DNA of 64,000 nucleotides from Ranitomeya imitator. Its lineage: Eukaryota. Below are positions 13,050 through 27,451 of the stretch, piece after piece (within the stretch, counting starts at the first letter, position 1; each line of letters starts with the position of its first letter). The stretch covers positions 43,338,001 through 43,402,000 of the forward strand of contig NC_091290.1 in the NCBI RefSeq assembly GCF_032444005.1. Reading direction: 5' to 3'. The notes under the pieces were generated by a model. The model saw only the letters and a program-made list of their open reading frames with translations. It ran no database searches and was not told the DNA's origin. The position numbers were made by a program, and so were the translations under genes.

Positions 13050-14417
13050 TTGTTTAGGCAGAATCAATGGAAAAAGATTGTATCTGGAGATGAAACTAAG
13101 AAGTATCATACCTGTAGGAGAAAAACAAAATACATTTATGTCACAATAACATTGATGTAAATTATTATTTATTTTTAATTTTAGAATGTTCAGCTTCTTT
13201 TTATACTAGAGATTTATCTCATCTTGATAACCCCCTTTGTGTTTCATTGGTGCATGTATATGTTATATAGGAGGACCCCTGCTCGGGATCCTCTCTTTCA
13301 GCCATAGACCAAAAAGAAGGAAACTGAACATATGGTCAAAGAACAAAGAATATGACAATAGAATTAAGGCTAAAATACCTTTTATTAGTGAGAGTAGGAA
13401 GAAGTAGCGCTACATGCATAAAGAGGAGCCCGCACAAGTTACTAAAAAAGGAAATTAAACATGATTATACATAACAATAAAAATACATTAAAAACCAAAC
13501 CATAAGGTAATGGATGGGAAGATAATATATAAATTTATCAGCATAAATAGCAGAGTAGTTAGCAATTTATAAGAAATAACAAGGCCCACAAGAAAAGATG
13601 GCTCACAGTAGAAGTGTAACCGACAATGACTCACCGTATGTGTGAAATAGGACAGTCATCTGGATGTAAGGGTACCGTCACACAGTGCAATTTTGATCGC
13701 TACGACGGCACGATTTGTGATGTTCGAGCGATATAGGTACGATATCGCAGCGTGTGACACGCTCCTGCGATCAGGGACCCCGCTGTGAATCGTACGTCGT
13801 AGCACATCGTTTGAAACTTTCTTTCGTCGTCTAGTGTCCCGCTGTGGCGGCATGATCGCATGGTGTAACAAAGGTGTGCACGATATTGTATACGATGTAA
13901 AGGGCGGAGGAGCTGGCTACGTAGGAGCGCTAAATTCTCCACCTCCTGTGTGCTGATTGGGCGGTACAATACTGTGCGCTCATTCGACAGACAAAGGACT
14001 ATTGTTCCCAGCGGATAAAACCGGAGCTGTCGAGCGCTCTCTTCATTTCTCTCTGGAGCACGTGCTGGAAACAGAACTCCTAAATTCGCTGGATTCCCTG
14101 GACTTTGATAACTACTATACAGACTTTTACGGCAAGAGGTATGTATAACGCTACAGCGTAGCAGATGTTGCGCTTCAACGGGGATAAACGCTGGAGCGTG
14201 GTCGATTGTTCCTTTATGGAGAGTAGGGTAGAAGGCCAGAGAGCCTCAGGTACACAGCTGTAGCGTGGCCCAATTAATTAATCCTTTTTCAGATCGAGCT
14301 GTAGCATGGTTCACTGCCCCGTTTATGCCAGTAGTAATATAGTTATTAGATCAATGGTCAAAACATTGTTTTGTAAGCACGTGTATTTATTGTACGTTTG
14401 TTTTCTTTTTAGGAACT

Positions 14418-16145
14418 ATGCTCACTTCCGATGAGAGTTCTGTTGTTGCTGCTGCCCTGGTGTTTGAGGCAGCACGTCTCCAAGAGGAGAGACGTCCTAA
14501 ACGAAAACGTCGCATGTGGACCCGGAGCTGGCTGCAGAAAAGATCCACATTGTCACACATGGGTCTCATAAGAGAGTTACGTGATAATAATCCACATGAT
14601 TTCCGAAACTACCTTAGGATGTCAGAGGAATCATTCAAGATAATACTGTCTGCTGTTACGCCACTCATACAAAGGAGTGATACGCCGATGCGTGCAGCCG
14701 TGCCCGTGGATGAAAGGTTGGCGGTGACACTGCGGTTCCTGGCTACAGGAAGGTCTCTTCAGGATTTGCAGTTTTCCGCAGCTGTTTCCAGACCTTTCCT
14801 CAGCGTTGTGATTCCGGAGACATGCGCGGCCATTGTGCAGAGCTTAAGGCATTATATGGAGGTACTACTATTTAATTTGGGCTGCTGTGTTATGTCGATA
14901 TATTATACTAGCTATGTAACCCGTTCTACGGCCTGGCGGCGCACATTTCTATTGGTATCTGTTCTCCATCCTATCATGAGCTGCTCCCATCCTGTGCCCC
15001 CATTCTGACATGTGCTGCTGCGATCCTGCGCCTCCATTCTGACATGTGCTGCTCACATTTTGCGGCTCCATTCTGATATGTGCTGCTCCAATCCTGCGCC
15101 ACCCTTCTTTTATTTGCTGCTCCCAACGTAATTTAATAGGCTATATTATTTCGATATATTGTTTTGCACCCCCTCTCAGTCAGTGAAGCCGTTTCCTAAA
15201 TTGGCTGCCTGCATATTCAGGATTGTTGACTTTGTTATACTAATCAAAACTATGCGTCAATCTCTCTAGGATGTCCACATGAGAGTGTATGTGCACAACA
15301 ATATATTTGACCTAATTTGTACATGTTTCCTTCTCATCCTGCAGTTTCCCAAGTCGGCGGAGGACTGGAAGAAGATTGCTTCCGATTTTGATCAGCTGTG
15401 GCAGTTTCCAAACTGCGGTGGTGCATTAGATGGAAAGCATGTGCGCATCACACAACCAGCCAACTCTGGATCCTTTTTTTTCAACTACAAAGGATATTTC
15501 AGTGTGATCCTCATGGCCCTTGTCAATGCAAACTATGAGTTCGTAGATGTGGATGTTGGCATGAATGGTCGAGTCTCCGACGGTGGAGTTTTTGATCACA
15601 CTTCATTTGGGGAAAGCTTGAGGAACAATCAACTGCAGTTGCCAATAAATGAAGACACAAAAGCAAACCTCAATTTTGTTTTCATCGCTGATGAAGCTTT
15701 CCCTCTTCATCCACATTTGCTGAAGCCATTTGCGCAGAGAACACTCACACCGGAGCGCCGAATCTATAATTACCGGTTGTCGAGGGCCCGTCGTGTAGTT
15801 GAAAATGCCTTTGGGATAATGGCTAATCGGTTTAGAGTGTTCCACACAGCTATCAACTTGAAGCTGCCGTCTATAGACTTTGTGGTTTTGGCATGCTGTG
15901 TGCTCCATAATTTCCTGAGACGTCATGATACGAGCTCCTATTCTCCTCCTTCGTTTATTGATGCAGTGGACCCAAGAACCGGAGATATTGTGCCCGGGGA
16001 ATGGCGTACACAACCTGATAATTTAACAGCTCTTCAAGCACTCGGATCTGGCAGACAGGCAGACGATGCAAGGGACTGTCGAGAAAAATACTGTCAGTAC
16101 TTTAATGGTTCTGGAGCTGTACCCTGGCAGGATCACGCCGTATAA
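14418..16145 (+). CDS. Harbinger DDE transposase (HARBI1-like), 2 exons, 414 aa, open
   Basis: Exon 1 14418-14861 (GAG|GT), exon 2 15345-16145 (CAG|TTT), phase 0. Motifs GALDGKHV, FIADEAFPL and RRVVENAFG give a complete D-D-E triad; N-terminal HTH-like region RLAVTLRFLATG. Confidence 0.92.
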
Positions 16146-16606
16146 AAAAAAAATTTTTTTTTGCTTTGCTGTTTACTCAACAATATGTATGTTATGCTTT
16201 CGTGTCCACAATGTAAATTTGCGAGTAGGTCACTGTCTTTTGTGTAATAAAATTAAATTGTATTTATTTCTCCCATTATTGTTGATTGTTCATTTTAGAT
16301 AGTACGTTATAGCGGTCGGTCTATATTGCATTCCAAAGTCAAATGGCGACTTCCTTCCATTCCAAGCTCTGCCATGCACACAAACAATGGTGTACCCACA
16401 CAGAATCGTGTTTTCAATCATATAAACCTCTGTAAATTACTTAAATGTGATGAGATGCCTAAAAAATGGTGTTGTAAACCCTTATAGCTCCATAAATATT
16501 AAATAATGAGAAATTTTTTTTTTCTAAGGTAAGGTAACTATTTCTTTATATGTAATAATCTAACTCCAAAACATAACATAACAAAAAAAAAACAATAAAA
16601 AACAAA

Positions 16607-18307
16607 TTATCTTCTGCCACGGTCTAACAGGTGTCGCAGCGTCACACCCTGCTGCTCTACTTGAGCCTGGAGGAGCGCTGCTGGCTGCTGCAGGAGCGCT
16701 GCTGTACGCTCCAGGCGTAGTTGTCTGGCCAGGAGCTCTGTCACGGTGGGCAGTTCTGTGGATAGAAGAGGTTGGAGAACTGATGGTGATTCCGCTGAAA
16801 ATACATATTGACCTCTGTTGCTGGACCAAATTGAGTGTGTTGTAAATTTCTATTTGGTCCGGGCACACAGGGCATTTTGTTTTTAAATTAAATTTTACAG
16901 TTTCAGTTGTCAATTGTGACATTCCACCGAGATATCCACTCGTATTATCTTAATACTTACGGAGAAGGGACGCCGGTTCTTCGTTGCCAGAACCACTACT
17001 GCTTATTTCCCATCCATGACATCTGGCCACTGCTGCAACAGCTAAAAGGAAATAATAACAGATCTGGTTAACTATGGAACACTCCGTTGCAAAGCGCTCG
17101 CTGTTTTGGTCTCTTACGTATGGTAGCTTCTGGGGAGAAGACCGCCGACCCGGGGGTGGAAAATGAGGGCCGGAAGGGAGGTGTTGAGGGTGGTGTTGGG
17201 GTGCGAGGCTGCATGGTCAATAAAGATGTAGAGGTCCCGGGCTCTGGGCTGCTGCTGGTGGCGGATGAAGGAGAGCTTGTCTCAATGAGAGGTGCCTGTT
17301 GCCGACGCCTTCTCTCTACACATAAATGAAACAAACAAAATGTTTAGACATTCCTATACTGTATGTTCTAAACCAAGTGCAGAGCAAAGGGAATCATTGC
17401 AACCAATACGGTTCCTGCTTTAATTAGTCAAAAAAGTCTAATGAACGCTGTGTTCTGATCGTGTTTTCCAGCAGCATTTGGAGAAGTTGTAACAGAGAAG
17501 CTTGTCTTTTATATGTGTAGTACTGTGTGTGCCCCATATTGTGTGCTCCGTACGATGTGTACGTGGTTCTGTGTGCGGCACGGTGTGTACGTCGTTGTGT
17601 GCGCGTCGCGCTGTGTGTGCTACATATTATGTGCGGCACGGTGTGTATGCCGCAGTACTAGAAGAGCATCACGGCTGTGCGCGTCTACTGATTAGCTGCC
17701 ATTATTTCCCCTCCGGGCACTGTTCGCGCAGGATAATGTATGCAATATGTACGCTACACTGTTATGTCACCTATGCTATAATTACATTTCTATGAGTGAT
17801 GGTACACTTACGTGAGGTCCCGGGCTGTGGCCTGATGCTGTTGGTGGATGAAGGACAACTGGCAGCAATGGCAGGTCTGTGTTGCCGTCGCCTTCTCTCT
17901 ACACATAAATGAAAGAAAAGCAATGTTTTAAAAACAAAGAACAGGGATTCCAGAGCCCCCCCCAAAAAAAATAGCGCGCAGGGTGGCCAACCTCCTCGTA
18001 AAAGCGTGCATCGCCCAATTCCCCCATACTGGTACTTGCCTCGCCTTGTCTCCGCACGCAACTCAGCCAGAAGGTGTGGATTTTTGTGGCGGAGGTCGGC
18101 CCATTTCTTACGCAACTGCTGCGCACTCCGGCGGACGCCAAACCTCCTATCCAGCATTTTCCCAATGCGACGCAGCACCTCCTGCTTATGTTGGTTCGGG
18201 TGTGCTGGGATAGTCTTCTGGCATTCATAATCAAGGGCATCCATGCGATGTACCAAAAACCGGAGCTCGGTGTGCCCCAAAGGGGCAGATCTCTGTCTTC
18301 CAGCCAT
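16607..18307 (-). CDS. Element-borne Myb/SANT-like (trihelix) protein A with C-terminal coiled coil, 5 exons, 273 aa
   Basis: Exons 18307-18040, 17898-17812, 17315-17118, 17041-16961 and 16794-16607, all phase-1 junctions, no stops. Domain ...KQEVLRRIGKML..GVRRSAQQLRKKWADLR; last exon ELLARQLRLERTAALLQQ... Confidence 0.8.
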
Positions 18308-18600
18308 TACAGATAAAAAGACGTTATAAAGCAGCACCTAACCACGCCCAGAGGAAGTCCTTAACTATGCATTTCTCCCGCGCGATCCGCATCGCTATAG
18401 CGTTGCCGTTTATGGACAGCGTCACTTTTGTGACGTCTGAGAGTGACAGAAGGAACGCACATAGTAAATGACGCTCGAACGATGTAGATATTACGCCGGT
18501 GCGGCACGTAATGTGCGCTCGTGGTATATGACGGCGTGATGACGTTACAACGTTCCTGCGTGCCTGCGCTACCTTGCTTTGCTTCCCTGACATCCTTAAA
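18308..18600. promoter_or_regulatory. Probable bidirectional promoter between Myb genes A and B
   Basis: 293 bp separate the divergent ATGs. CpG-rich, with several TGACG half-sites. Function is inferred. Confidence 0.55.
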
Positions 18601-20099
18601 ATGGCTGCCAGGCGACGTGATTCTCCTATGGGTGTCCCAGAGCTAAAGTTCATGATTAGCACTATGGATCGGATGCGTTACGAAACCACAGGGCTGGTGC
18701 TGCACCGCAACCAGCACAAGGATGAAGTCGTACGTGTGGTGTCTGAGGGCCTCAGGAAGCAGTTTGGGATAACCAGAAGTAAGGCCCAGATTGTGAAGAA
18801 ATGGGGCGATCTTAAATCCAAAAGCCCAGCGCGCCTGCAGGAGCTTCGCCGCGAGATCCGCAGTGGTGAGTACGCAGGTACCCAAAAGTATTGCACGCCG
18901 AAGGGTTAATTGGGTGTGTATGTGGTGTGTATGTGGCCCTGCTATGGTGCAATAATGAAAGGTGCAGAGCACTTTTTTGCCATGCTATGGTGCAATAATG
19001 AATGGTGCAGAGCACTATGTGGCCCTGCTATGGTGCAATAATGAACGGTGCAGAGCACTATGTGGCTCTGCTGTGTTTCCACAATGAACGGTGCAGAGCA
19101 CTATGTGGCTCTGCTGTGTTTCCACAATGAACGGTGCAGAGCACTAGGTGGCCCTGCTGTGGTGCAACAATGAACGGTGCACAGCACTATGTGGCCCTGC
19201 TGTGGTGCAATAATGAATGGTGCAGAGCACTTTTTTGCCATGCTATGGTGCAATAATGAATGGTGCAGAGCACTATGTGGCCCTGCTATGGTGCTATGCT
19301 AACAGACCTTTTTTTTTTTTTTTTCCTTCACAGAGGCAAAGAGACAGCGTCGCCGCCACGAGGCATCCCACACCACCACAGATATTGCTGTGCCCTCCGG
19401 GTCAACGGCTCAACAACCCAGTAGGTTCACCCAATAATGTGATTATGATTTGTTGGAAGGTGCCCTCCCCCCCCCCCCCCCACCTGCAGTCACTGTTACC
19501 ATTTATGTAAAAAAAAATTTTTTATTTTTTCCCTTCACAGAGGCAAAGACACAGCGCCGCCGTCGAGTGTACCAGGCCTTTGACACGGACTCAGATCCAG
19601 ACTTGCCCTCCGTGCCTACAGATCCTAGTAGGTTCCCACAATAATGTGATTTGAATCTGGTGGCAGGTCCCCTATTCCCCCCCCCACCTGCAGTGACTGT
19701 TGCCATTTATGTAAAAAAAATTTTTTTTTTTTTTCCCCTCACAGAGGCAACGACACAGCGTCGCAGCCACGAGGCTTCCCACCCCGCCTCACATGTCCGT
19801 GTGCCCTCTGGGTCAACAGCTGAACAACCTAGTAGGTTCCCACAATAAGGCCGGCGTCACACACAGCGTAAAACAATACGGTCCGTATATTACGGCCGTA
19901 ATACACTGAAAAGTCCCGAAAAAAGTGGTCCGTAGCTCCTCCGTAGGCAGGGTGTGTCAGCGTTTTTTGCGCATGGCATCCTCCGTATGTAATCCGTATG
20001 GCATCCGTACTGCGTGGTTTTCTCGCAGGCTAGCAAAACCAACATACCGCTATAGAAGTGATCCATGTGTCCCAAAAAGAAAAGAAAATATATATATAC

Positions 20100-20159
<60 letters not shown>

Positions 20160-23100
20160 AGTAGACACATATATTAGAGAGAAAAGCCGGTAATTCAGTG
20201 CGGTGTACAGTAAAATCACACTGACAGCTTACAGTAGAATAGGTAGAATAAATGTGTACACATAGAATAGGTATATATATATATATATGTCAGTGAGACA
20301 CATATATGTATATATATTAATATTTATTCCAGCGCTAGACAGCTTGAAAGCCGGTAATTCAATTACCGGCTTTTTCCTTCTCCTTCCTAAAACCCGACAT
20401 GATTTGAGACATGGTTTACATACAGTAAACCATGTCTTCTCTCCATTTTTTTTGCAGATTCCACACTACTAATGTCAGTAGTGTGTATCTGCAAAATTTG
20501 GCCGTTCTAGCTCTTAAAATAAAGGGTTAAATGGCGGAAAAAATTGGCGTGGGCTCCCGCGCAATTTTCTCCGCCAGAGTAGTAAAGCCAGTGACTGAGG
20601 GCAGATATTAATAGCCTGGAGAGGGTCCATGGTTATTGGCCCCCCCCTGGCTAAAAATATCTGCCCCCAGCCACCCCAGAAAAGGCACATCTGGAAGATG
20701 CGCCTATTCTGGCACTTGGCCACTCTCTTCCCATTCCCGTGTAGCGGTGGGATATGGGGTAATGAAGGGTTAATGCCACCTTGCTATTGTAAGGGGACAT
20801 TAAGCCTAATTAATAATGGAGAGGCGTCAATTATGACACCTATCCATTATTAATCCAATTGTAGTGAAGGGTTAAATAAAACACAAACACATTATTTAAA
20901 ATTATTTTAATGAAATAAAAACAATGGGTGTTGCAGTATTTTATTCAACGCCCAATCCAGTCACTGAAGACCCTCGTTCTGTGAGTAAAAAAACATAATA
21001 AACCAACAATATACTTACCCTCCGCAGATCTGTAACGTCCAACGATGTAAATCCTTCTGAAGGGGTTAAAACATTTTGCAGCAATGCAGAAAGCCAGGGA
21101 GCTTTCTAGGTAATTTCCCACGATCTATGAACAGCCAGCAGAGGGCGCCTCACCGCAAATAAAGCTAAATATAGATCATTGATCTATTTTTAGCCTCATT
21201 CCCTGGGGTTTTGCAGCGAGGAGCAGCCTGCATTAGCACAGCTCCTTGCTGCAAAATGTTTTAACCCCTTCAGAAGGGTTTACATCGTTGGACGTTACAG
21301 ATCTGCGGAGGGTAAGTATATTGTTGGTTTATTATGTTTTTTTACTCACAGAACGAGGGTCTTCAGTGACTGGATTGGGCGTTGAATAAAATACTGCAAC
21401 ACCCATTGTTTTTATTTCATTAAAATAATTTTAAATAATGTGTTTGTGTTTTATTTAACCCTTCACTACAATTGGATTAATAATGGATAGGTGTCATAAT
21501 TGACGCCTCTCCATTATTAATTAGGCTTAATGTCACCTTACAATAGCAAGGTGGCATTAACCCTTCATTACCCCATATCCCACCGCTACACGGGAATGGG
21601 AAGAGAGTGGCCAAGTGCCAGAATAGGCGCATCTTCCAGATGTGCCTTTTCTGGGGTGGCTGGGGGCAGATATTTTTAGCCAGGGGGGGCCAATAACCAT
21701 GGACCCTCTCCAGGCTCTTAATATCTGCCCTCAGTCACTGGCTTTACTACTCTGGCGGAGAAAATTGCGCGGGAGCCCACGCCAATTTTTTCCGCCATTT
21801 AACCCTTTATTTTAAGAGCTAGAACGGCCAAATTTTGCAGATACACACTACTGACATTAGTAGTGTGGAATCTGCAAAAAAAATGGAGAGAAGACATGGT
21901 TTACTGTATGTAAACCATGTCTCAAATCATGTCGGGTTTTAGGAAGGAGAAAGAAAAAGCCGGTAATTGAATTACCGGCTTTCAAGCTGTATAGCGCTGG
22001 AATAAATATTAATATATATACATATATGTGTCTCACTGACATATATATATATATACCTATTCTATGTGTACACATTTATTCTACCTATTCTACTGTAAGC
22101 TGTCAGTGTGATTTTACTGTACACCGCACTGAATTACCGGCTTTTCTCTCTAACAGCGCTGCGTATTTCTCGCAAGTCACACTGCTTGTCCGTGTGTAAT
22201 CCGTATTTTTCACGCTTCCATAGACTTTCATTGGCGTATTTCTTGCGCAGTACGGTGACAAACGCAGCATGCTGCGATTTTGTACGGCCGTAGAAAGCCG
22301 TATAATACTGATCAGTAAAATACGGCAAATAGGAGCAGGGGCATAGAGAATAATTGTGCCGTATTTTTTGCGAGTTTTACGGACGTAGATTCTGCGCTCT
22401 TACGTCCGTAAAACTCGCATGTGTGACGCCGGCCTAATGTGTTCAGGATTTGGTGGCAGGTCCCCTCTTTCCCCCCCCCCCCTCCCCCGGCAGCAAGTGT
22501 TGCCATATATGCTAACAGACCTTTTTTTTTTTTTTCCATTCACAGAGGCAAAGACACAGCACCGCAGCCACGAGGCTTCCCACCCCGCCTCACATGTCCG
22601 TGTGCCCTCTGGGTCAACAGCTGAACAACCTAGTAGGTTCCCACAATAATGTGTTCAGGATTTGGTGGCAGGTCCCCTCTTTTTCCCCCCCCCCCCCGGC
22701 AGCAAGTGTTGCCATATATGCCAACAGACCTTTTTTTTTTTTTTTTCCCTTCACAGAGGCAAAGACACAGCGCCGCAGCCACGAGGCTTCCCACCCCGCC
22801 TCACATGTCCGTGTGCCCTCTTGGTCAACAGCTGAACAACCTAGTAGGTTCCCACAATAATGTGTTCAGGATTTGGTGGCAGGTCCCCTCTTTCCCCCCC
22901 CCCCTCCCCCGGCAGCAAGTGTTGCCATATATGCTAACAGACCTTTTTTTTTTTTTTCCCTTCACAGAGGCAAAGACACAGCGCCGCAGCCACGAGGCTT
23001 CCCACCCCGCCTCACATGTCCTTGTGCCCTCTGGGTCAACAGCTGAACAACCTAGTAGGTTCCCACAATAATGTATTCAGGATTTGGTGGCAGGTCCCCT

Positions 23101-23790
23101 CTTTTCCCCCCCCCTCCCCCGGCAGCAAGTGTTGCCATATATGCTAACAGACCTTTTTTTTTTTCCCTTCACAGAGGCAAAGACACAGCGCCGCAGCCAC
23201 AAGGCTTCCCACCCCGCCTCACATGTCCGTGTGCCCTCTGGGTCAACAGCTGAACAACCTAGTAGGTTCCCACAATAATGTGTTCAGGATTTGGTGGCAG
23301 GTCCCCTCTTTTCCCCCCCCCCCTCCCACGGCAGCAAGTGTTGCCATATATGCCAAAAGACCTTTTTTTTTTTTCCTTCACAGAGGCAAAGAGACAGCGC
23401 CACCGCCGACAGCACGAGGCATTCGACACCGACACAGATCCCGAAGTGCCCTCCGTGCCTCAACATCCTAGTAGGTTCCCACAATAAAGTTATTTTGATT
23501 TTGTTGCAGGCCCACTCTTTCACCCCCAACCCAAACCCCCCCCCCCCCCCCAACTCAGTTTTGCTTACTTTTTTTGTATTTATTTTACTTCACAGAAGCA
23601 AAGACACATCGGGAGACTACTGTGTTATTAATGTTATGTTTTTTGACCCACAGCTGTCGTCACTGTCAACAAGGAGGATATTGAAGCCGGCATAGAAAAG
23701 TTACTCCACACTATGGCACATATTCAGGAGCAGCACAATGTGGCAATGGAGGAGCTGCAGAAGCTGCGGGACATGTGCCAGCAGTTGTAG
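18601..23790 (+). CDS. Element-borne Myb/SANT-like protein B with repeat linker and C-terminal coiled coil, 10 exons, up to 365 aa
   Basis: Exon 1 18601-18865 (G|GTGAGT). Eight 87-nt exons: 19334-19420, 19541-19627, 19745-19831, 22546-22632, 22757-22843, 22968-23054, 23175-23261, 23384-23470. Last exon 23654-23790 (EDIEAGIEKLLHTMAHIQEQHNVAMEELQKLRDMCQQL*); AATAAA at ~23821. Confidence 0.78.
18930..19294. repeat. 43-bp minisatellite in intron 1 of Myb gene B
   Basis: About 8 copies of CTATGTGGCCCTGCTATGGTGCAATAATGAACGGTGCAGAGCA and variants. Confidence 0.9.
19849..22434. mobile_element. Non-autonomous Harbinger-type element with ~900-bp internal inverted repeat, nested in an intron of Myb gene B
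   Basis: TIR GGCCGGCGTCACAC, TAA TSD (19846-19848 and 22435-22437). Arms ~20175-21086 and ~21246-22152 are near-identical reverse complements. Confidence 0.95.
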
Positions 23791-24031
23791 GCGGGCCAAT
23801 AATCCATATTTTGTTGTTACAATAAAAATATTTTGTTAAACTATCATTCCATTTTTTTTGTATTACTTAACTGTACATGAATTTGTTACGTTAATTTGTG
23901 CCCTCATACAGTGCTGTGATTGAGACACACCAATCAAAAAGTAGTGATAGAATTTATAATAAAAGCTTTTATTTGAAACATTATTTTAACAAGACAATAA
24001 AATAAAAAGGAATGTAAAAGAAGCTAGGAAA

Positions 24032-25455
24032 TCACAAATTATGATACGACGATTGTTCCCGCTGAAAACTTTGGTGCCTGATGGGCGAAGCCATATCTAA
24101 AGGTATTGGCGTGTAGGAGTTATTAGGGGGTGGATGGCCGAAGTGGGAAACGTGAGCATTGTGTCGCATCGATGTCTGACACTGTGACCAACCATTGTAA
24201 TTTGATGGCTCTGTCCGCTGTATTGGCCGGGAAGAGACCAAACAAGTGTTCTTGTCCAAATCGCCATCAGTACCCTTGTTTACTGCTTCCAGAATCAGAC
24301 GCTCTGCTAGTATTCTTTGGTTGTCGTCCATTTTTGCCAGTTTGTCAACCACATAGTGTCCAAACCCCTCTAACGCAGGGCTAACATTTCTTGTCAACAC
24401 CTTCTTTGCAAGGCTCAATAGTTCATTTGAGGCGTCTGAGGTGGCTTTCCGTTTTCTTGGACCTTGCCTCGATTGAGTCCTGGCAGGTGCAGCCTCCACT
24501 AAATCTGTTGTCGTGCAGTCCTGTGAACAGTCCAGTGTACTCTCCTGCGCACTGTCATCCTGGGGGGGGGGGAAAAAAAAAACAAGTTATGAACCCGGCA
24601 ACAAAAAGTAGTACCACCATAACCGCATCCAAACTATATATTCGTAGTAGGTAACAAAAAGATTATAATATATTTGATGCTTAGTAATATTCTTTAACCC
24701 TCCCTTTTATTGAATACTTTGAACTACACTGTTCTGACTGTTAGGTGAACCTGACCAATATTTTATAGTCTAAATAGTCTCAACAAGAGTACATCGGCAG
24801 CTTGAAGCGATACTATTTTCTATATTGCTTAGATGGTATGGTTTACATATATCGCCATTTCATACATATTAAGTTCCCCATATAATACTTGACTGCGACA
24901 GGGTTACTTATGTGTACATGTTTTTGTAACAACTTCAAACTGATGTGATAATCAGAAGTATAAAACCTAAAATGCAGAGAAACATTATGTAATTATAGGA
25001 CACATTGGTGAACTTTCGTCCAAAGAGCTACTTACTTGTTGCCCTTGTGACTCCTGCTCGGCGTGGTTCTCCGAAACTATTGGTTCCACAGGTGACAACA
25101 ACCGAAGACACGTGGAAGTCCGTGGCACCTCTTGGTCCCTCAGAAAATTAAGATGCTCAAAATACCAAAGTTTTGGCACATAAACTTCTTCAGTGGAAGC
25201 TCCGGACCTTGTAGTCTGAAGAACCTTGTTCAGCTCCTTCCTCCACACCGTGCGGAGCGCCTGGATTTTCTTTTTAATAACTGCTTCGTTAGCTGCCTCA
25301 TCTGGTGCATGACGATTGTAAAGCTCAATGAGCTGTAAGTAACCCTCCCTCCTCTTTTCCCTGTTACAATACTCAGGAGACTTGATTTTCCTGAGGCAGG
25401 GAAAAGACTGATAAATCTCGATGAAATCCCTGATGAACTCCACACGATTAGACAT
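24032..25455 (-). CDS. MADF-domain protein, the usual Harbinger partner, 2 exons, 315 aa
   Basis: Exon 1 25455-25036 (CAA|GTAAGT), exon 2 24559-24032. MADF motifs FIEIYQSFPCLRKIK and KKKIQALRTVWRKE...YVPKLWYFEHLNFL. BESS-like FGHYVVDKLAKMDDNQRILAERLI. Confidence 0.88.
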
Positions 25456-25539
25456 CTGAAAAATAATTATAAAAAAAAATTACATGGTTGACAAAGAGTC
25501 CTATTAACAATACTTTTGACAGTGTGCCAAACGCTTAAC

Positions 25540-26480
25540 AACAGCAGCCACACAAAGCGCTCATGCCTACCATCGCTTCTTCCATCTGCCACGCCATAGG
25601 CCACCATAACCCAAAACAGTGTACCGCCCACTTCCCTACAGCAGCCACACAAAGCGCTCATGGTGACCATCCATTGTACCATCTGCCACGCTCTAGCTCA
25701 ACAGACACAACCGGTCATAAGCAGTCACAACAGCGTACCATCCGCATCGCTTCAGCGGCGGAACGAAGCGGTAATGCCGACCAAACTGCGTTCCATCTAC
25801 CACGCTGTAGCCCACCAGTCACGACCAGTCACAACCAGTCACGACAGCGTACCATCCGCATCGCTTCTTCCATCTGCTCCGCCATAGGCCACTACCGCCC
25901 GCTTCCCTACAGCAGCCACACAAAGCGCTCATGGTGACCATCCATTGTACCATCTGCCACGCTCTAGCTCAACAGACACAACCGGTCATAAGCAGTCACA
26001 ACAGCGTACCATCCGCATCGCTTCAGCGGCGGAACGAAGCGGTCATGCCGACCAAACTGCGTTCCATCTACCACGCTGTAGCCCACCAGTCACGACCAGT
26101 CACAACCAGTCACAACAGCGTACCATCCGCATCGCTTCTTCCATCTGCTGCGCCATAGGCCACTACTGCCCGCTTCCCTACAGCAGCCACACAAAGCGCT
26201 CATGGTGACCATCCATTGTACCATCTGCCACGCTCTAGCTCAACAGACACAACCGGTCATAAGCAGTCACAACAGCGTACCATCCGCATCGCTTCAGCGG
26301 CGGAATGAAGCGGTCATGCCGAACAAACTGAGTTACATCTACCACGCTGTAGCCCACCAGTCACAACCAAGCACAACAGCGTACCATCTGCCACATTGTA
26401 GCCCTCCAGTCACAACAGTGTACCATCCGCTTCGCTTCAGCGGTGGAACGAAGCACTCATGCCGTCCATACAGCGTTCCA
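25540..26480. repeat. ~271-bp tandem repeat upstream of the MADF gene
   Basis: CAGCAGCCACACAAAGCGCTCATGG recurs at ~25640, 25911 and 26181, with degenerate partial units on both sides. Confidence 0.9.
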
Positions 26481-27451
26481 TCCACCACGCCCAAGCGGTT
26501 TACATACCTCGAAGCAGCGGTGCAAAGCGTGGTATATTCAGCGAAGTAGAAAATTCCAATGTCCAGGTCCACCAAGTGTCCAAGTACGAAGTGAAGAAAG
26601 GAAATTTTGAAAGCAGTGAGGTAGCATTGGGAACAATAGCGCTCAGGTGACAAATTTTCCAACCAATTGTGTGCACAGAACCTTTGGCCTATCAGCACAC
26701 TAGCTAGTAGCACAACACGCCCCTAGTGAACAACGTCACGCACAGATTATGCAAAATTTGCTCTGAATCGTCGTGTGTGACACGACCGTACGACTGTCCC
26801 ATACGACTTCTACATCGCAAATACGTCATGAATTTATCGCTTCAGCGCCGTGCATCGTGTTGTGTGACCGCAGTCTACGATGTTTGAAACGATAATTAAG
26901 CGACGATGTAACGTCACAAATCGTGCCGTCGTAGCGATCAAAATTGCACTGTGTGACGGTACCCTAAGAGTATCAGAGGAAACAGTAACTGTGCTATATA
27001 CAATGAAGGAAAATAGACACCACAGGGATGTAAATTCATGTAAAGGTACAAACAAAGGTCACTATAAGGTTGTGTATTTTGTCCATAGTGTATAGAAGCA
27101 GGAGATGCAAGACCTACAAAAAAAGTCATTATAATTGCAATATATTGATAGGGCAAGTAGGTAGAAGGAGGAGATGCACAACCTGTGGGGTACAACTATC
27201 CAGAGAAGGATGGAATACTGCGAATATGGGCACAATAGATTACCTGTATGGTTCATGGTCCTGGTACGGCGCACACCCCGATGCATGTTTTGGAACGTGT
27301 CCTCTTTATGCATGTAGTGCCACTAATAATGGTATTTTAGCCTTAATTCTATTGTCCTACTCTTTGTTGTTTCACCATATGTTCAGTTACCCTCATTTTG
27401 GTCTTCACAATTCCCAAATGGTCTTCTATTCTTCCCTGTACAGCAGATATA

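What the first reader, a model, noticed from the sequence alone, without database searches (positions are those of the whole stretch)
16607..18865. Head-to-head paralogous Myb/SANT-like genes with degenerate DNA-binding signature: candidate regulators or anti-silencing factors
Seen: the ATGs are 293 bp apart. Both exon 1s encode an ~89-aa domain (EL.F....MD...Y...HxNQHK.EV...G..RS..Q..KKW.DL) ending at the same phase-1 position, followed by an 87-nt exon starting with a basic NLS-like run, and both genes end in a coiled-coil exon. Only the last Trp (KKW) of the usual trihelix aromatic positions is kept. Established: plant Harbinger-derived proteins (ALP1/ALP2, HDP1/HDP2) act in chromatin complexes, and VANDAL elements encode VANC anti-silencing proteins. 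Inference: A and B arose by an old inverted duplication, are co-expressed, may heterodimerise through the coiled coils, and modulate transposition or silencing.
Basis: partly seen in the sequence, partly recalled or inferred. Interest (0 to 1): 0.8.

Follow-up and report, generated by a model that had tools for sequence, protein, structure and literature searches.

The report
Two extra Myb-like genes in frog Harbinger
A young, multi-copy Harbinger "jumping gene" of a poison frog carries, besides its transposase and MADF partner, two intact, spliced, back-to-back sister genes for small Myb/SANT-type DNA-binding proteins, which matters because Harbinger elements are textbook two-gene transposons.

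Summary
Gene A (minus strand, ATG 18307) and gene B (plus strand, ATG 18601) are 293 bp apart. Their first exons are 45% identical (E 7e-27) and end in the same phase. Both spliced reading frames are open (260 and 365 aa).

They lie inside a 13.3-kb PIF/Harbinger element (13670-26964) with 56-nt TIRs, a TAA target duplication, a DDE_Tnp_4 transposase and a MADF gene. The genome is almost certainly Ranitomeya imitator, not a plant.

The N-terminal domain is a confident, strongly basic three-helix fold. Its best structural matches are Harbinger-derived Myb-like proteins (NAIF1, MSANTD3/4, FSBP, MYPOP, TSNARE1), Zeste and GT-1. It is divergent rather than degenerate.

Both genes evolve under purifying selection (dN/dS about 0.2-0.26). 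At least 40 copies keep the whole head-to-head module.

A is the old "third gene" of this transposon lineage. Three-gene relatives occur in the same genome and in Xenopus laevis. B is a fast-evolved duplicate seen only in Ranitomeya.

Heterodimerisation, divergent transcription and any anti-silencing role remain untested. This scan had already noted the third gene on other DNA of this genome. The new points here are the A/B pair, the origin of B and the conserved shared promoter.

The parts
13670..26964 (.). Whole four-gene PIF/Harbinger element. TIRs at 13670-13724 and 26910-26964. TAA target-site duplication at 13667-13669 and 26965-26967.
   Evidence: Inverted repeat of 56 nt, 98% complementary. 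TAA read on both flanks.
14418..16145 (+). Transposase gene in two coding blocks, 14418-about 14890 and about 15340-16145. This is context for the finding.
   Evidence: DDE_Tnp_4 E 3.9e-32, Plant_tran E 2.9e-9.
18040..18307 (-). Gene A exon 1: an 89-aa Myb/SANT-like domain, ending in a GC donor (G|GCAAGT).
   Evidence: The donor is kept in 35 of 37 copies. AF2 pLDDT 86.7.
17812..17898 (-). Gene A exon 2a: 87 nt, phase 1-1, basic run ERRRRQHR. It duplicates the 5' part of exon 2b.
   Evidence: Its donor is joined to exon 2b in a contig of run X1 (17812 to 17315, ends CT..AC).
17118..17315 (-). Gene A exon 2b: 198 nt, Pro/Ser-rich linker.
   Evidence: Joints 17315/17812 and 17118/17041. It matches the NCBI model P0001.
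16961..17041 (-). Gene A exon 3: 81 nt.
   Evidence: Joints 17041/17118 (X2) and 16755/16961 (X2, X4) with CT..AC ends.
16607..16755 (-). Gene A last exon: C-terminal long helix and stop codon.
   Evidence: The homologous part of P0001 is modelled as helix 188-226.
18308..18600 (.). The 293-bp A-B spacer, a candidate bidirectional promoter. CpG o/e is 1.49. The core 18378-18425 is invariant in 7 copies of diverged sublineages.
   Evidence: The A-proximal 105-122 bp are also kept (76-84% identity) in the A-transposase spacers of three-gene elements.
18601..18865 (+). Gene B exon 1: an 88-aa Myb/SANT-like domain, donor G|GTGAGT.
   Evidence: It is 100-85% identical in at least 150 copies.
19334..23470 (+). 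Gene B: eight 87-nt phase 1-1 exons starting at 19334, 19541, 19745, 22546, 22757, 22968, 23175 and 23384, each with its own intron. The array is interrupted by a nested MITE at 19849-22434.
   Evidence: The same 29-aa repeats appear in the NCBI model P0002.
23654..23790 (+). Gene B last exon: C-terminal amphipathic helix and stop codon.
24035..25455 (-). MADF gene, the canonical Harbinger second gene. Coding blocks at 25455-24988 and 24499-24035. This is context for the finding.
   Evidence: MADF_DNA_bdg E 1.2e-13.

Best explanation
A and B are two functional paralogous genes encoded by the element itself. The element is a recently active four-gene PIF/Harbinger DNA transposon of a dendrobatid frog.

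Each protein has four parts: a strongly basic N-terminal trihelix-type Myb/SANT domain (a divergent relative of the Myb_DNA-bind_5 / NAIF1-MSANTD group), a basic helix or NLS-like run, a disordered linker, and one long C-terminal amphipathic helix.

A is the ancient third gene of a frog Harbinger lineage that also carries a MADF gene. B is a fast-evolved duplicate of an A-like gene, found only in Ranitomeya. It sits head to head with A at a conserved, CpG-rich 293-bp spacer.

Shown: gene structure, fold class, residence inside the transposon, copy number, purifying selection, and antiquity of A.

Inferred mechanism: by analogy with the Harbinger3_DR Myb-like protein and NAIF1, A and B bind specific sequences of their own element through helix 3. 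Candidate targets are the subterminal repeats or the promoter core. They then oligomerise through the C-terminal helix and work with the transposase and the MADF protein to assemble or tune the transposition complex. Both genes would be transcribed divergently from the shared spacer.
For: The element:
- TIRs, TAA duplication, DDE_Tnp_4 and MADF.

The genes:
- Both spliced frames are open.
- Three A introns are removed exactly at the predicted GT..AG sites in contigs of runs X1, X2 and X4, whose kind is not on record (the tool guesses RNA).
- The GC donor of intron 1 is kept in 35 of 37 copies, although dS reaches about 1.
- NCBI models P0001 (A-type) and P0002 (B-type) have the same exon logic.

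The fold:
- AF2 pLDDT 86.7.
- 22 of the 24 best Swiss-Prot AFDB matches are FSBP, MSANTD3/4, MYPOP, NAIF1 and TSNARE1, with probability 0.80-0.99 and TM 0.57-0.66.
- VIA-align gives Zeste Z 7.4 and GT-1 Z 6.7.
- All 25 family members give weak Myb_DNA-bind_4/5 hits.
- The family profile hits P0020 and P0022 at E about 1e-12, and these carry PF13873 at 44-46 bits.
- ESM features point to PF13873 and TSNARE1 clusters.
- Net charge is +12 and +11.
- Helix 3 (R60 S61 Q64 K67 K68 W69 D71 L72 K75) is invariant between A and B.

Selection and mobility:
- Median dN/dS is 0.21 for A and 0.26 for B.
- At least 40 full modules exist, five of them about 100% identical on four chromosomes.

Antiquity of A:
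- Three-gene elements (<A Tnp> <MADF) occur in the same genome.
- Xenopus laevis has Tnp> <MADF A-like> within 27-nt TIRs.

B:
- It forms a 100/100 clade on a stem of 1.02 substitutions per site inside the dendrobatoid clade.
- It is also present in R. variabilis.

The spacer:
- Conserved core and CpG o/e 1.49.

Background: the Harbinger Myb-like protein binds subterminal DNA and the transposase (PMC9710019, PMC9392472).
Against: - No DNA-binding, protein-interaction or transposition data exist.
- Formal Pfam membership fails: A scores 21.6 bits against a cut-off of 21.7 on PF13873, and B has no PF13873 hit.
- Foldseek against the PDB gave nothing below E 1, and Z 6-7 is within the range of chance helical matches.
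- The A-B coiled-coil complex prediction gave no verdict.
- The window copy of A has a Pro inside the C-terminal helix.
- The kind of the sequencing runs is only guessed to be RNA. Splicing of intron 1 and any B splice were not seen, and strands are unknown.
- Canonical Harbingers transpose with two proteins, so a third or fourth protein may be regulatory rather than part of the transposition machinery.
- Mosaic copies combine a 72%-identical A with a 97%-identical transposase. This argues against tight A-transposase co-adaptation.
Confidence: 0.6

Rival explanations
1. A and B are regulators or anti-silencing factors. They would not take part in cutting and pasting. Instead they would bind the element's own promoter, or chromatin factors, to keep the element transcribed or unmethylated, functionally like VANC or HDP1/2.
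For: - Two-gene Harbingers suffice for transposition (PMC9710019), so the extra genes may be accessory.
- A always sits at a shared, CpG-rich, conserved promoter region: with B here, with the transposase in three-gene elements, and with MADF in Xenopus.
- SANT-type folds can bind proteins as well as DNA (PMC9392472).
Against: - There is no homology to VANC and no chromatin domain.
- The strongly basic domain and the invariant helix 3 look like a DNA binder of the NAIF1 type, whose transposon relatives act in transposition.
- Nothing here measures methylation or expression.
Confidence: 0.2
2. A and B are self-limiting repressors. They would compete with the MADF protein or the transposase for the element's binding sites and damp transposition, like the KP repressor of the P element.
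For: - Both keep a DNA-binding-type domain and an oligomerisation helix but have no catalytic part.
- Very large copy numbers could favour self-regulation.
Against: - Purifying selection has acted in every autonomous sublineage for a long time, including Xenopus. This is easier to explain by a positive role in propagation.
- The subfamilies that carry them are the recently amplified ones.
Confidence: 0.1
3. A and B are captured or hitch-hiking host genes, or one of them is a decaying duplicate, with no function for the element.
For: - Relatives occur in frogs away from any recognisable transposase: Xenopus L041 and Engystomops L042.
- There are KRAB fusions in Bufo and Phyllobates.
- The copy number of B's exon cassette varies between copies.
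Against: - The three-gene set is linked inside TIRs in both Ranitomeya and Xenopus.
- dN/dS is about 0.2-0.26 for both genes.
- Hundreds of exon-1 copies are open.
- Promoter and splice signals are conserved.
- The fold class is the one typical of Harbinger Myb-like proteins.
Confidence: 0.05

Closest known systems
Harbinger Myb-like protein (the second gene of PIF/Harbinger, e.g. Harbinger3_DR) and its domesticated descendants NAIF1, MSANTD3, MSANTD4, FSBP, MYPOP and TSNARE1
   Same: - Encoded by a Harbinger element.
- N-terminal trihelix-type Myb/SANT domain with the KKW.DLK third-helix motif.
- These are the best structural matches.
- The layout matches my recollection of MSANTD4 and MYPOP, which was not tested here: N-terminal domain, basic run and C-terminal helix.
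   Different: - Here it is a third and a fourth gene beside a MADF-type second gene.
- The middle Trp is replaced by Leu or Val.
- Family-specific DY(D/E)(G/C) and HPN.HK motifs are present.
- It falls below the Pfam PF13873 threshold.
- It is multi-copy and mobile, not domesticated.
Canonical two-gene PIF/Harbinger transposons
   Same: DDE_Tnp_4 transposase, TIRs, TWA (TAA) duplication, and a MADF/Myb-like partner gene.
   Different: - Four genes in 13.3 kb, or three in sister subfamilies and in Xenopus.
- The literature I could search describes two genes as the hallmark (PMC9710019, PMC4482050, PMC9392472). I found no report of a third or fourth gene.
Plant trihelix GT-1 and Drosophila Zeste DNA-binding domains
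   Same: Best solved-structure matches: Z 6.7 and 7.4, 67-73 aligned residues, three helices plus a fourth.
   Different: Sequence identity is only 10-18% and the aromatic triad is not kept. This is resemblance in fold only.
ALP1/ALP2 and HDP1/HDP2 (plant Harbinger-derived chromatin proteins) and VANC (VANDAL anti-silencing protein)
   Same: They are proteins of transposon origin that act on chromatin, and HDP2/ALP2 are Myb-like.
   Different: The plant proteins are single-copy domesticated host genes, or, for VANC, belong to an unrelated MULE. A and B are mobile, multi-copy genes of a frog element. No chromatin function has been tested.

Membership tests
PIF/Harbinger DNA transposon | DDE transposase of the DDE_Tnp_4 / Plant_tran type | tested here: met
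   E 3.9e-32 on 15279-16145.
PIF/Harbinger DNA transposon | Terminal inverted repeats and a 3-bp TWA target-site duplication | tested here: met
   56-nt TIRs, 98% complementary, with TAA on both flanks.
PIF/Harbinger DNA transposon | A second gene for a Myb/SANT/MADF protein | tested here: met
   MADF_DNA_bdg E 1.2e-13 at 24988-25455. A and B are additional to it.
Pfam Myb_DNA-bind_5 (PF13873) | Score at or above the curated gathering cut-off (21.7 bits) | tested here: not met
   A scores 21.6 bits. B has no hit, only Myb_DNA-bind_4 at 16.7 bits. Of the 25 family members, 18 hit at E up to 0.1 with a best E of 2e-4. I therefore file it as a divergent relative, not a formal member.
Pfam Myb_DNA-bind_5 (PF13873) | Homology through intermediate sequences | tested here: met
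   The profile of A and B hits P0020 and P0022 at E 2.6e-12 and 5.9e-12. These carry PF13873 at 46 and 44 bits.
Myb/SANT/trihelix fold | Three-helix bundle with a recognition helix, matching known members | tested here: met
   AF2 pLDDT 86.7 with helices 12-24, 37-56, 62-74 and a fourth at 77-88. AFDB matches have probability up to 0.99 but E 0.15-0.9. Zeste Z 7.4 and GT-1 Z 6.7. These scores are moderate.
Myb/SANT/trihelix fold | Three regularly spaced bulky aromatic residues (Trp triad) | tested here: not met
   Only W69 is kept. The helix 1 position is F17 and the helix 2 position is L or V. The same holds in Bufo P0022, which still passes PF13873.
Coiled-coil dimerisation module | Long amphipathic C-terminal helix with a heptad pattern | tested here: met
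   Helix 188-226 in P0001 at pLDDT 83-94. The a/d positions are 62% (A) and 69% (B) hydrophobic.
Coiled-coil dimerisation module | A-B (or A-A) association | tested here: inconclusive
   The complex prediction gave no verdict.
Bidirectional promoter | Head-to-head genes less than 1 kb apart with a conserved CpG-rich spacer | tested here: met
   293 bp, CpG o/e 1.49, invariant core at 18378-18425.
Bidirectional promoter | Divergent transcription from the spacer | not testable with these tools
   Only unstranded contigs of runs of unknown kind were available.
Domesticated Harbinger-derived host genes (ALP/HDP/NAIF1 type) | Single-copy, syntenic, without TIRs | tested here: not met
   Hundreds of copies inside TIR-bounded elements.
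VANC-type anti-silencing factor | Sequence relation to VANC and loss of methylation at the element's own DNA | not tested

The most novel reading that the evidence does not exclude
A whole lineage of vertebrate Harbinger transposons, from Xenopus to poison frogs, works with three proteins: a transposase, a MADF protein and a NAIF1-type Myb/coiled-coil protein. In Ranitomeya it works with four. The two classes of Myb-like protein would have separate jobs, for example nuclear import and recruitment versus end-bridging or promoter control. B would be a newly evolved partner of A that changed the element's specificity or regulation and went along with its recent burst.
Probability: 0.3. Interest if true: 0.75.

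Novelty: new variant of a known kind. Interest (0 to 1): 0.6.

Why it matters
PIF/Harbinger elements are defined in the literature as two-gene transposons. Here a lineage keeps a third Myb-like gene under selection across distant frogs. In one genus that gene has duplicated into a head-to-head pair driven from a conserved shared spacer.

If the extra proteins act in transposition or in its control, this changes the minimal model of Harbinger mobility. It also gives a natural case of duplication and divergence of a transposon accessory protein. It may bear on what NAIF1 and the MSANTD proteins inherited from their transposon ancestors.

Copies that are about 100% identical on different chromosomes suggest a vertebrate DNA transposon that is active or was active very recently. 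That makes the question experimentally tractable.

Tried and rejected
- **Complex prediction.** The two C-terminal exons (A 16610-16753, B 23656-23787) were folded together. The result was no verdict, so it counts neither for nor against binding.
- **Foldseek against the PDB.** Nothing below E 1. A sequence profile against PDB chains gave only chance hits.
- **RNA evidence.** No run on record as RNA holds the stretch. The four runs I laid are contigs of unknown kind. They show three A splices, but not intron 1, no B splice and no strand.
- **Context look-ups.** Look-ups for P0009, P0011 and P0013 found nothing. P0019 came without DNA. Xenopus L041 and Engystomops L042 show no transposase or MADF near the homologue.
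- **TIRs of three-gene elements.** The window's TIR was found only in L032, and the ends of the others lie outside the fetched loci.
- **Subterminal motifs.** TACGAC/GTCGTA, ACGACG, ACATCGT and GTCACAC are enriched at both ends. The background is CpG-depleted, so I do not count this as evidence for binding sites.
- **Literature.** Searches for a third ORF or gene in Harbingers found nothing relevant. One search failed on syntax.
- **Plant reading.** The plant interpretation was rejected because the genome is a frog's.
Full report
**What is there**

Gene A is on the minus strand and starts at 18307. Gene B is on the plus strand and starts at 18601. The spacer 18308-18600 is 293 bp. The first exons (A 18307-18040, B 18601-18865) translate to 89 and 88 residues. 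They share 40 of 88 identities (E 7e-27), and both end after the first base of a codon.

I rebuilt both genes from the sequence.

- **A** has five exons: 18307-18040, 17898-17812, 17315-17118, 17041-16961 and 16755-16607. They give an open 260-aa frame.
- **B** has exon 1, eight 87-nt phase 1-1 exons each preceded by the same acceptor (ttcacag) and followed by gtaggt, and a last exon at 23654-23790. They give an open 365-aa frame.

**Are the exons real?**

I laid contigs of four public runs on 16550-18925. Their kind is not on record, and the tool guesses RNA. The contigs contain joints 17812/17315, 17118/17041 and 16961/16755. Each has CT..AC ends, that is GT..AG on A's strand, exactly at my predicted introns 2, 3 and 4.

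Intron 1 uses a GC donor (G|GCAAGT). I did not see it spliced. However, the donor is kept in 35 of 37 copies from all subfamilies, although synonymous divergence between those copies reaches about 1.

NCBI gene models from other copies or species have the same exon logic. P0001 is an A-type protein of Ranitomeya variabilis (227 aa). P0002 is a B-type protein of R. imitator (334 aa) with five of the 29-aa repeats.

No B splice and no strand information were obtained.

**Where it sits**

The pair lies inside a 13.3-kb element, 13670-26964. The element has 56-nt terminal inverted repeats (98% complementary) and TAA on both flanks. It also carries a DDE_Tnp_4 transposase (E 3.9e-32) and a MADF gene (E 1.2e-13). 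This is a PIF/Harbinger transposon with the layout Tnp> <A B> <MADF.

The genome has 5.96 Gb. Its contig 1 has the same length as the contig that carries XP_069617890.1 of Ranitomeya imitator (assembly size in PMC12822217). The host is therefore a poison frog, not a plant.

**Copy number and selection**

- Exon 1 of A has 977 candidate places in the genome and exon 1 of B has 953.
- All 150 scored places for each gene are 65-100% (A) or 85-100% (B) identical, and nearly all are open.
- The 827-bp module (A exon 1, spacer, B exon 1) is found end to end in at least 40 scored places at 91-100% identity.
- Five of these places, on four chromosomes, are about 100% identical. That points to very recent movement.
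- Between subfamilies, the median pairwise dN/dS of exon 1 is 0.21 for A (151 pairs) and 0.26 for B (21 pairs).

Both genes have been kept by selection along the active lineages.

**What the proteins are**

By sequence, Pfam gives only sub-threshold hits. A scores 21.6 bits on Myb_DNA-bind_5 against a cut-off of 21.7, and B scores 16.7 bits on Myb_DNA-bind_4. Still, all 25 aligned family members hit Myb_DNA-bind_4 and 18 hit Myb_DNA-bind_5.

A profile of the family finds 93 representative proteins. Every one that carries a name is from a frog: Ranitomeya, Phyllobates, Anomaloglossus, Xenopus, Lithobates, Hyperolius, Engystomops or Bufo. Among the hits, P0020 and P0022 (E about 1e-12) carry PF13873 at 44-46 bits. 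This gives a link through intermediate sequences.

AlphaFold2 on the alignment gives a confident model (pLDDT 86.7) with helices 12-24, 37-56 and 62-74 and a fourth at 77-88.

- In the Swiss-Prot part of AlphaFold DB, 22 of the 24 best matches are the Harbinger-derived Myb-like proteins FSBP, MSANTD3, MSANTD4, MYPOP, NAIF1 and TSNARE1. Probabilities are 0.80-0.99 and TM 0.57-0.66, but E-values are only 0.15-0.9.
- An exhaustive structural search of the PDB puts Zeste (Z 7.4) and GT-1 (Z 6.7) on top, followed by many Myb domains.
- Foldseek against the PDB alone was not significant.
- Language-model features also point to PF13873 and TSNARE1 clusters.

The domains carry net charge +12 and +11. 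The residues invariant between A and B cluster in helix 3: R60, S61, Q64, K67, K68, W69, D71, L72 and K75.

The full-length A orthologue is modelled as this domain, then a disordered stretch 97-187, then one long helix 188-226. The C-terminal exons of A and B have a moderate heptad pattern.

I conclude that both are trihelix-type Myb/SANT proteins of the NAIF1/MSANTD kind. They are divergent, and not degenerate. The missing middle Trp is shared by the frog relatives printed and by Bufo P0022, which still passes PF13873.

**History**

Twenty more distant copies show other architectures.

- Where A is only 66-81% identical to the window's A and the transposase about 67-70%, the element has three genes, <A Tnp> <MADF. 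A is then head to head with the transposase and there is no B.
- Two Xenopus laevis loci (L043, L044) have Tnp> <MADF A-like>. In L044 this set lies inside 27-nt inverted repeats. The transposase is 53-58% identical and MADF 49-53% identical to the window's.

In a tree of the domain, the dendrobatoid sequences form one clade (support 99/90) with three groups:

- A;
- B, with 100/100 support on a long stem of 1.02 substitutions per site;
- a third group in which even the last Trp is Leu (KKL).

A and B are sisters only weakly (83/33). B-type proteins were found only in R. imitator and R. variabilis.

So A is the ancient third gene, and B is a later, fast-evolved duplicate that then came under purifying selection. 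That the duplication happened in place and inverted is possible but not shown.

Copies L029 and L035 combine a distant A (72-78% identical) with a near B (82-93%), and L035 and L032 pair such a distant A (72-73%) with a near transposase (93-97%). In L029 and L035 the switch lies inside the spacer, at about column 70 of the alignment. This shows recombination between lineages at the conserved promoter core.

**The spacer**

- CpG o/e is 1.49, against 0.5-0.57 in the flanks.
- In seven copies from sublineages with dS 0.15-0.27, the core 18378-18425 is invariant and most of the B-proximal half is conserved.
- The 105-122 bp next to A's ATG are also kept (76-84% identity) in the A-transposase spacers of three-gene elements.

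A therefore travels with its own conserved upstream region, and in every architecture it shares that region with a diverging neighbour: B, the transposase or MADF. This fits a bidirectional promoter. Divergent transcription itself was not observable with the data at hand.

**Mechanism**

Shown: the genes are intact, spliced at least in part, mobile, selected, of Myb/SANT fold and basic, with a C-terminal helix.

Inferred: the Harbinger3_DR Myb-like protein binds subterminal repeats and the transposase, and NAIF1 does the same with HARBI1 (PMC9710019, PMC9392472). By analogy, A and B most likely bind specific DNA of their own element through helix 3 and oligomerise through the C-terminal helix. 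They would then help to assemble or tune the complex formed with the transposase and the MADF protein.

I put about 0.9 on the identity statement and about 0.4 on this mechanism. The rivals are a regulatory or anti-silencing role (0.2), a self-limiting repressor (0.1) and a functionless passenger (0.05). The prediction of an A-B complex gave no verdict.

**Comparison and novelty**

The element meets every defining feature of PIF/Harbinger. A and B fail the formal Pfam cut-off and lack the aromatic triad, so I call them divergent relatives of the Myb_DNA-bind_5 group rather than members. They are not domesticated genes of the ALP/HDP/NAIF1 type, because they are multi-copy and lie inside TIRs.

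The papers I could search describe two genes as the hallmark of the superfamily (PMC9710019, PMC4482050, PMC9392472). No report of a third or fourth gene turned up. My literature access is partial, and Repbase could not be consulted.

This scan had already noted the third gene, and a four-gene copy, elsewhere in this genome. This report adds:

- the verified A/B pair and both gene models;
- the evidence for the fold;
- selection on both genes;
- the restricted distribution and long branch of B;
- the three architectures;
- the conserved shared spacer.

I rate it a new variant of a known kind, with interest 0.6.

Noticed in passing
window 19849-22434: A 2.6-kb nested element sits in an intron of gene B. 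It has TAA duplications on both sides (19846-19848 and 22435-22437), termini GGCCGGCGTCACAC...GTGTGACGCCGGCC that share CGTCACAC with the host element's TIR, and an almost perfect internal palindrome (arms of 444 and 373 nt). It looks like a Tourist/Harbinger-type MITE.
   Followed up: partly
window 19310-23470: Gene B's eight 87-nt exons form a minisatellite of exon-plus-intron cassettes with a period of about 204-211 bp. The NCBI model of another copy (P0002) has only five such repeats, so the number varies between copies.
   Followed up: partly
L024:6050-6316 and L026:5486-5752: In two copies, B exon 1 lies between the transposase and the 3' end of A. The whole A gene therefore sits antisense inside what would be B's first intron. 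This is a third gene order in the same family.
   Followed up: no
L032:4302-4403: This is a deletion derivative. A terminal inverted repeat lies about 90-140 bp upstream of A's ATG, so the copy keeps only the transposase and A.
   Followed up: no
L029 and L035 (spacer, alignment A3 columns 1-70): These are mosaic elements. A and the A-proximal 70 bp of the spacer come from a distant sublineage, and the rest is close to the window's. This is recombination at the conserved promoter core.
   Followed up: partly
P0008 (Phyllobates terribilis), P0022/P0108 (Bufo bufo, B. gargarizans): These are annotated proteins that fuse a KRAB box to one or two domains of this Myb-like family. The Bufo protein is shared by two toad species. 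They could be host repressors built from the transposon's DNA-binding domain, or annotation chimeras.
   Followed up: no
P0003-P0008, P0010 (Anomaloglossus, Phyllobates, Ranitomeya): This is a third dendrobatoid paralogue group in which even the last Trp is Leu (KKLADL). In Anomaloglossus one member lies 1.5 kb from a DDE_Tnp_4 gene.
   Followed up: partly
window 25622-26377: There is a 271-bp tandem repeat (2.8 copies, 97% identical) between the MADF gene and the right end of the element. Its function is unknown.
   Followed up: no
window 18539-18646: An upstream ATG in the spacer opens a 35-codon frame that overlaps B's start out of frame. In copies with an 8-bp deletion (e.g. L010) it is in frame, which appears to be the form in which NCBI's model P0002 starts.
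   Followed up: no
genome places listed (e.g. C1:476298521 and C1:476302499): Several elements show a second B-type exon 1 (88-89% identical) 4-6 kb downstream of the first on the same strand. The context could not be fetched.
   Followed up: no
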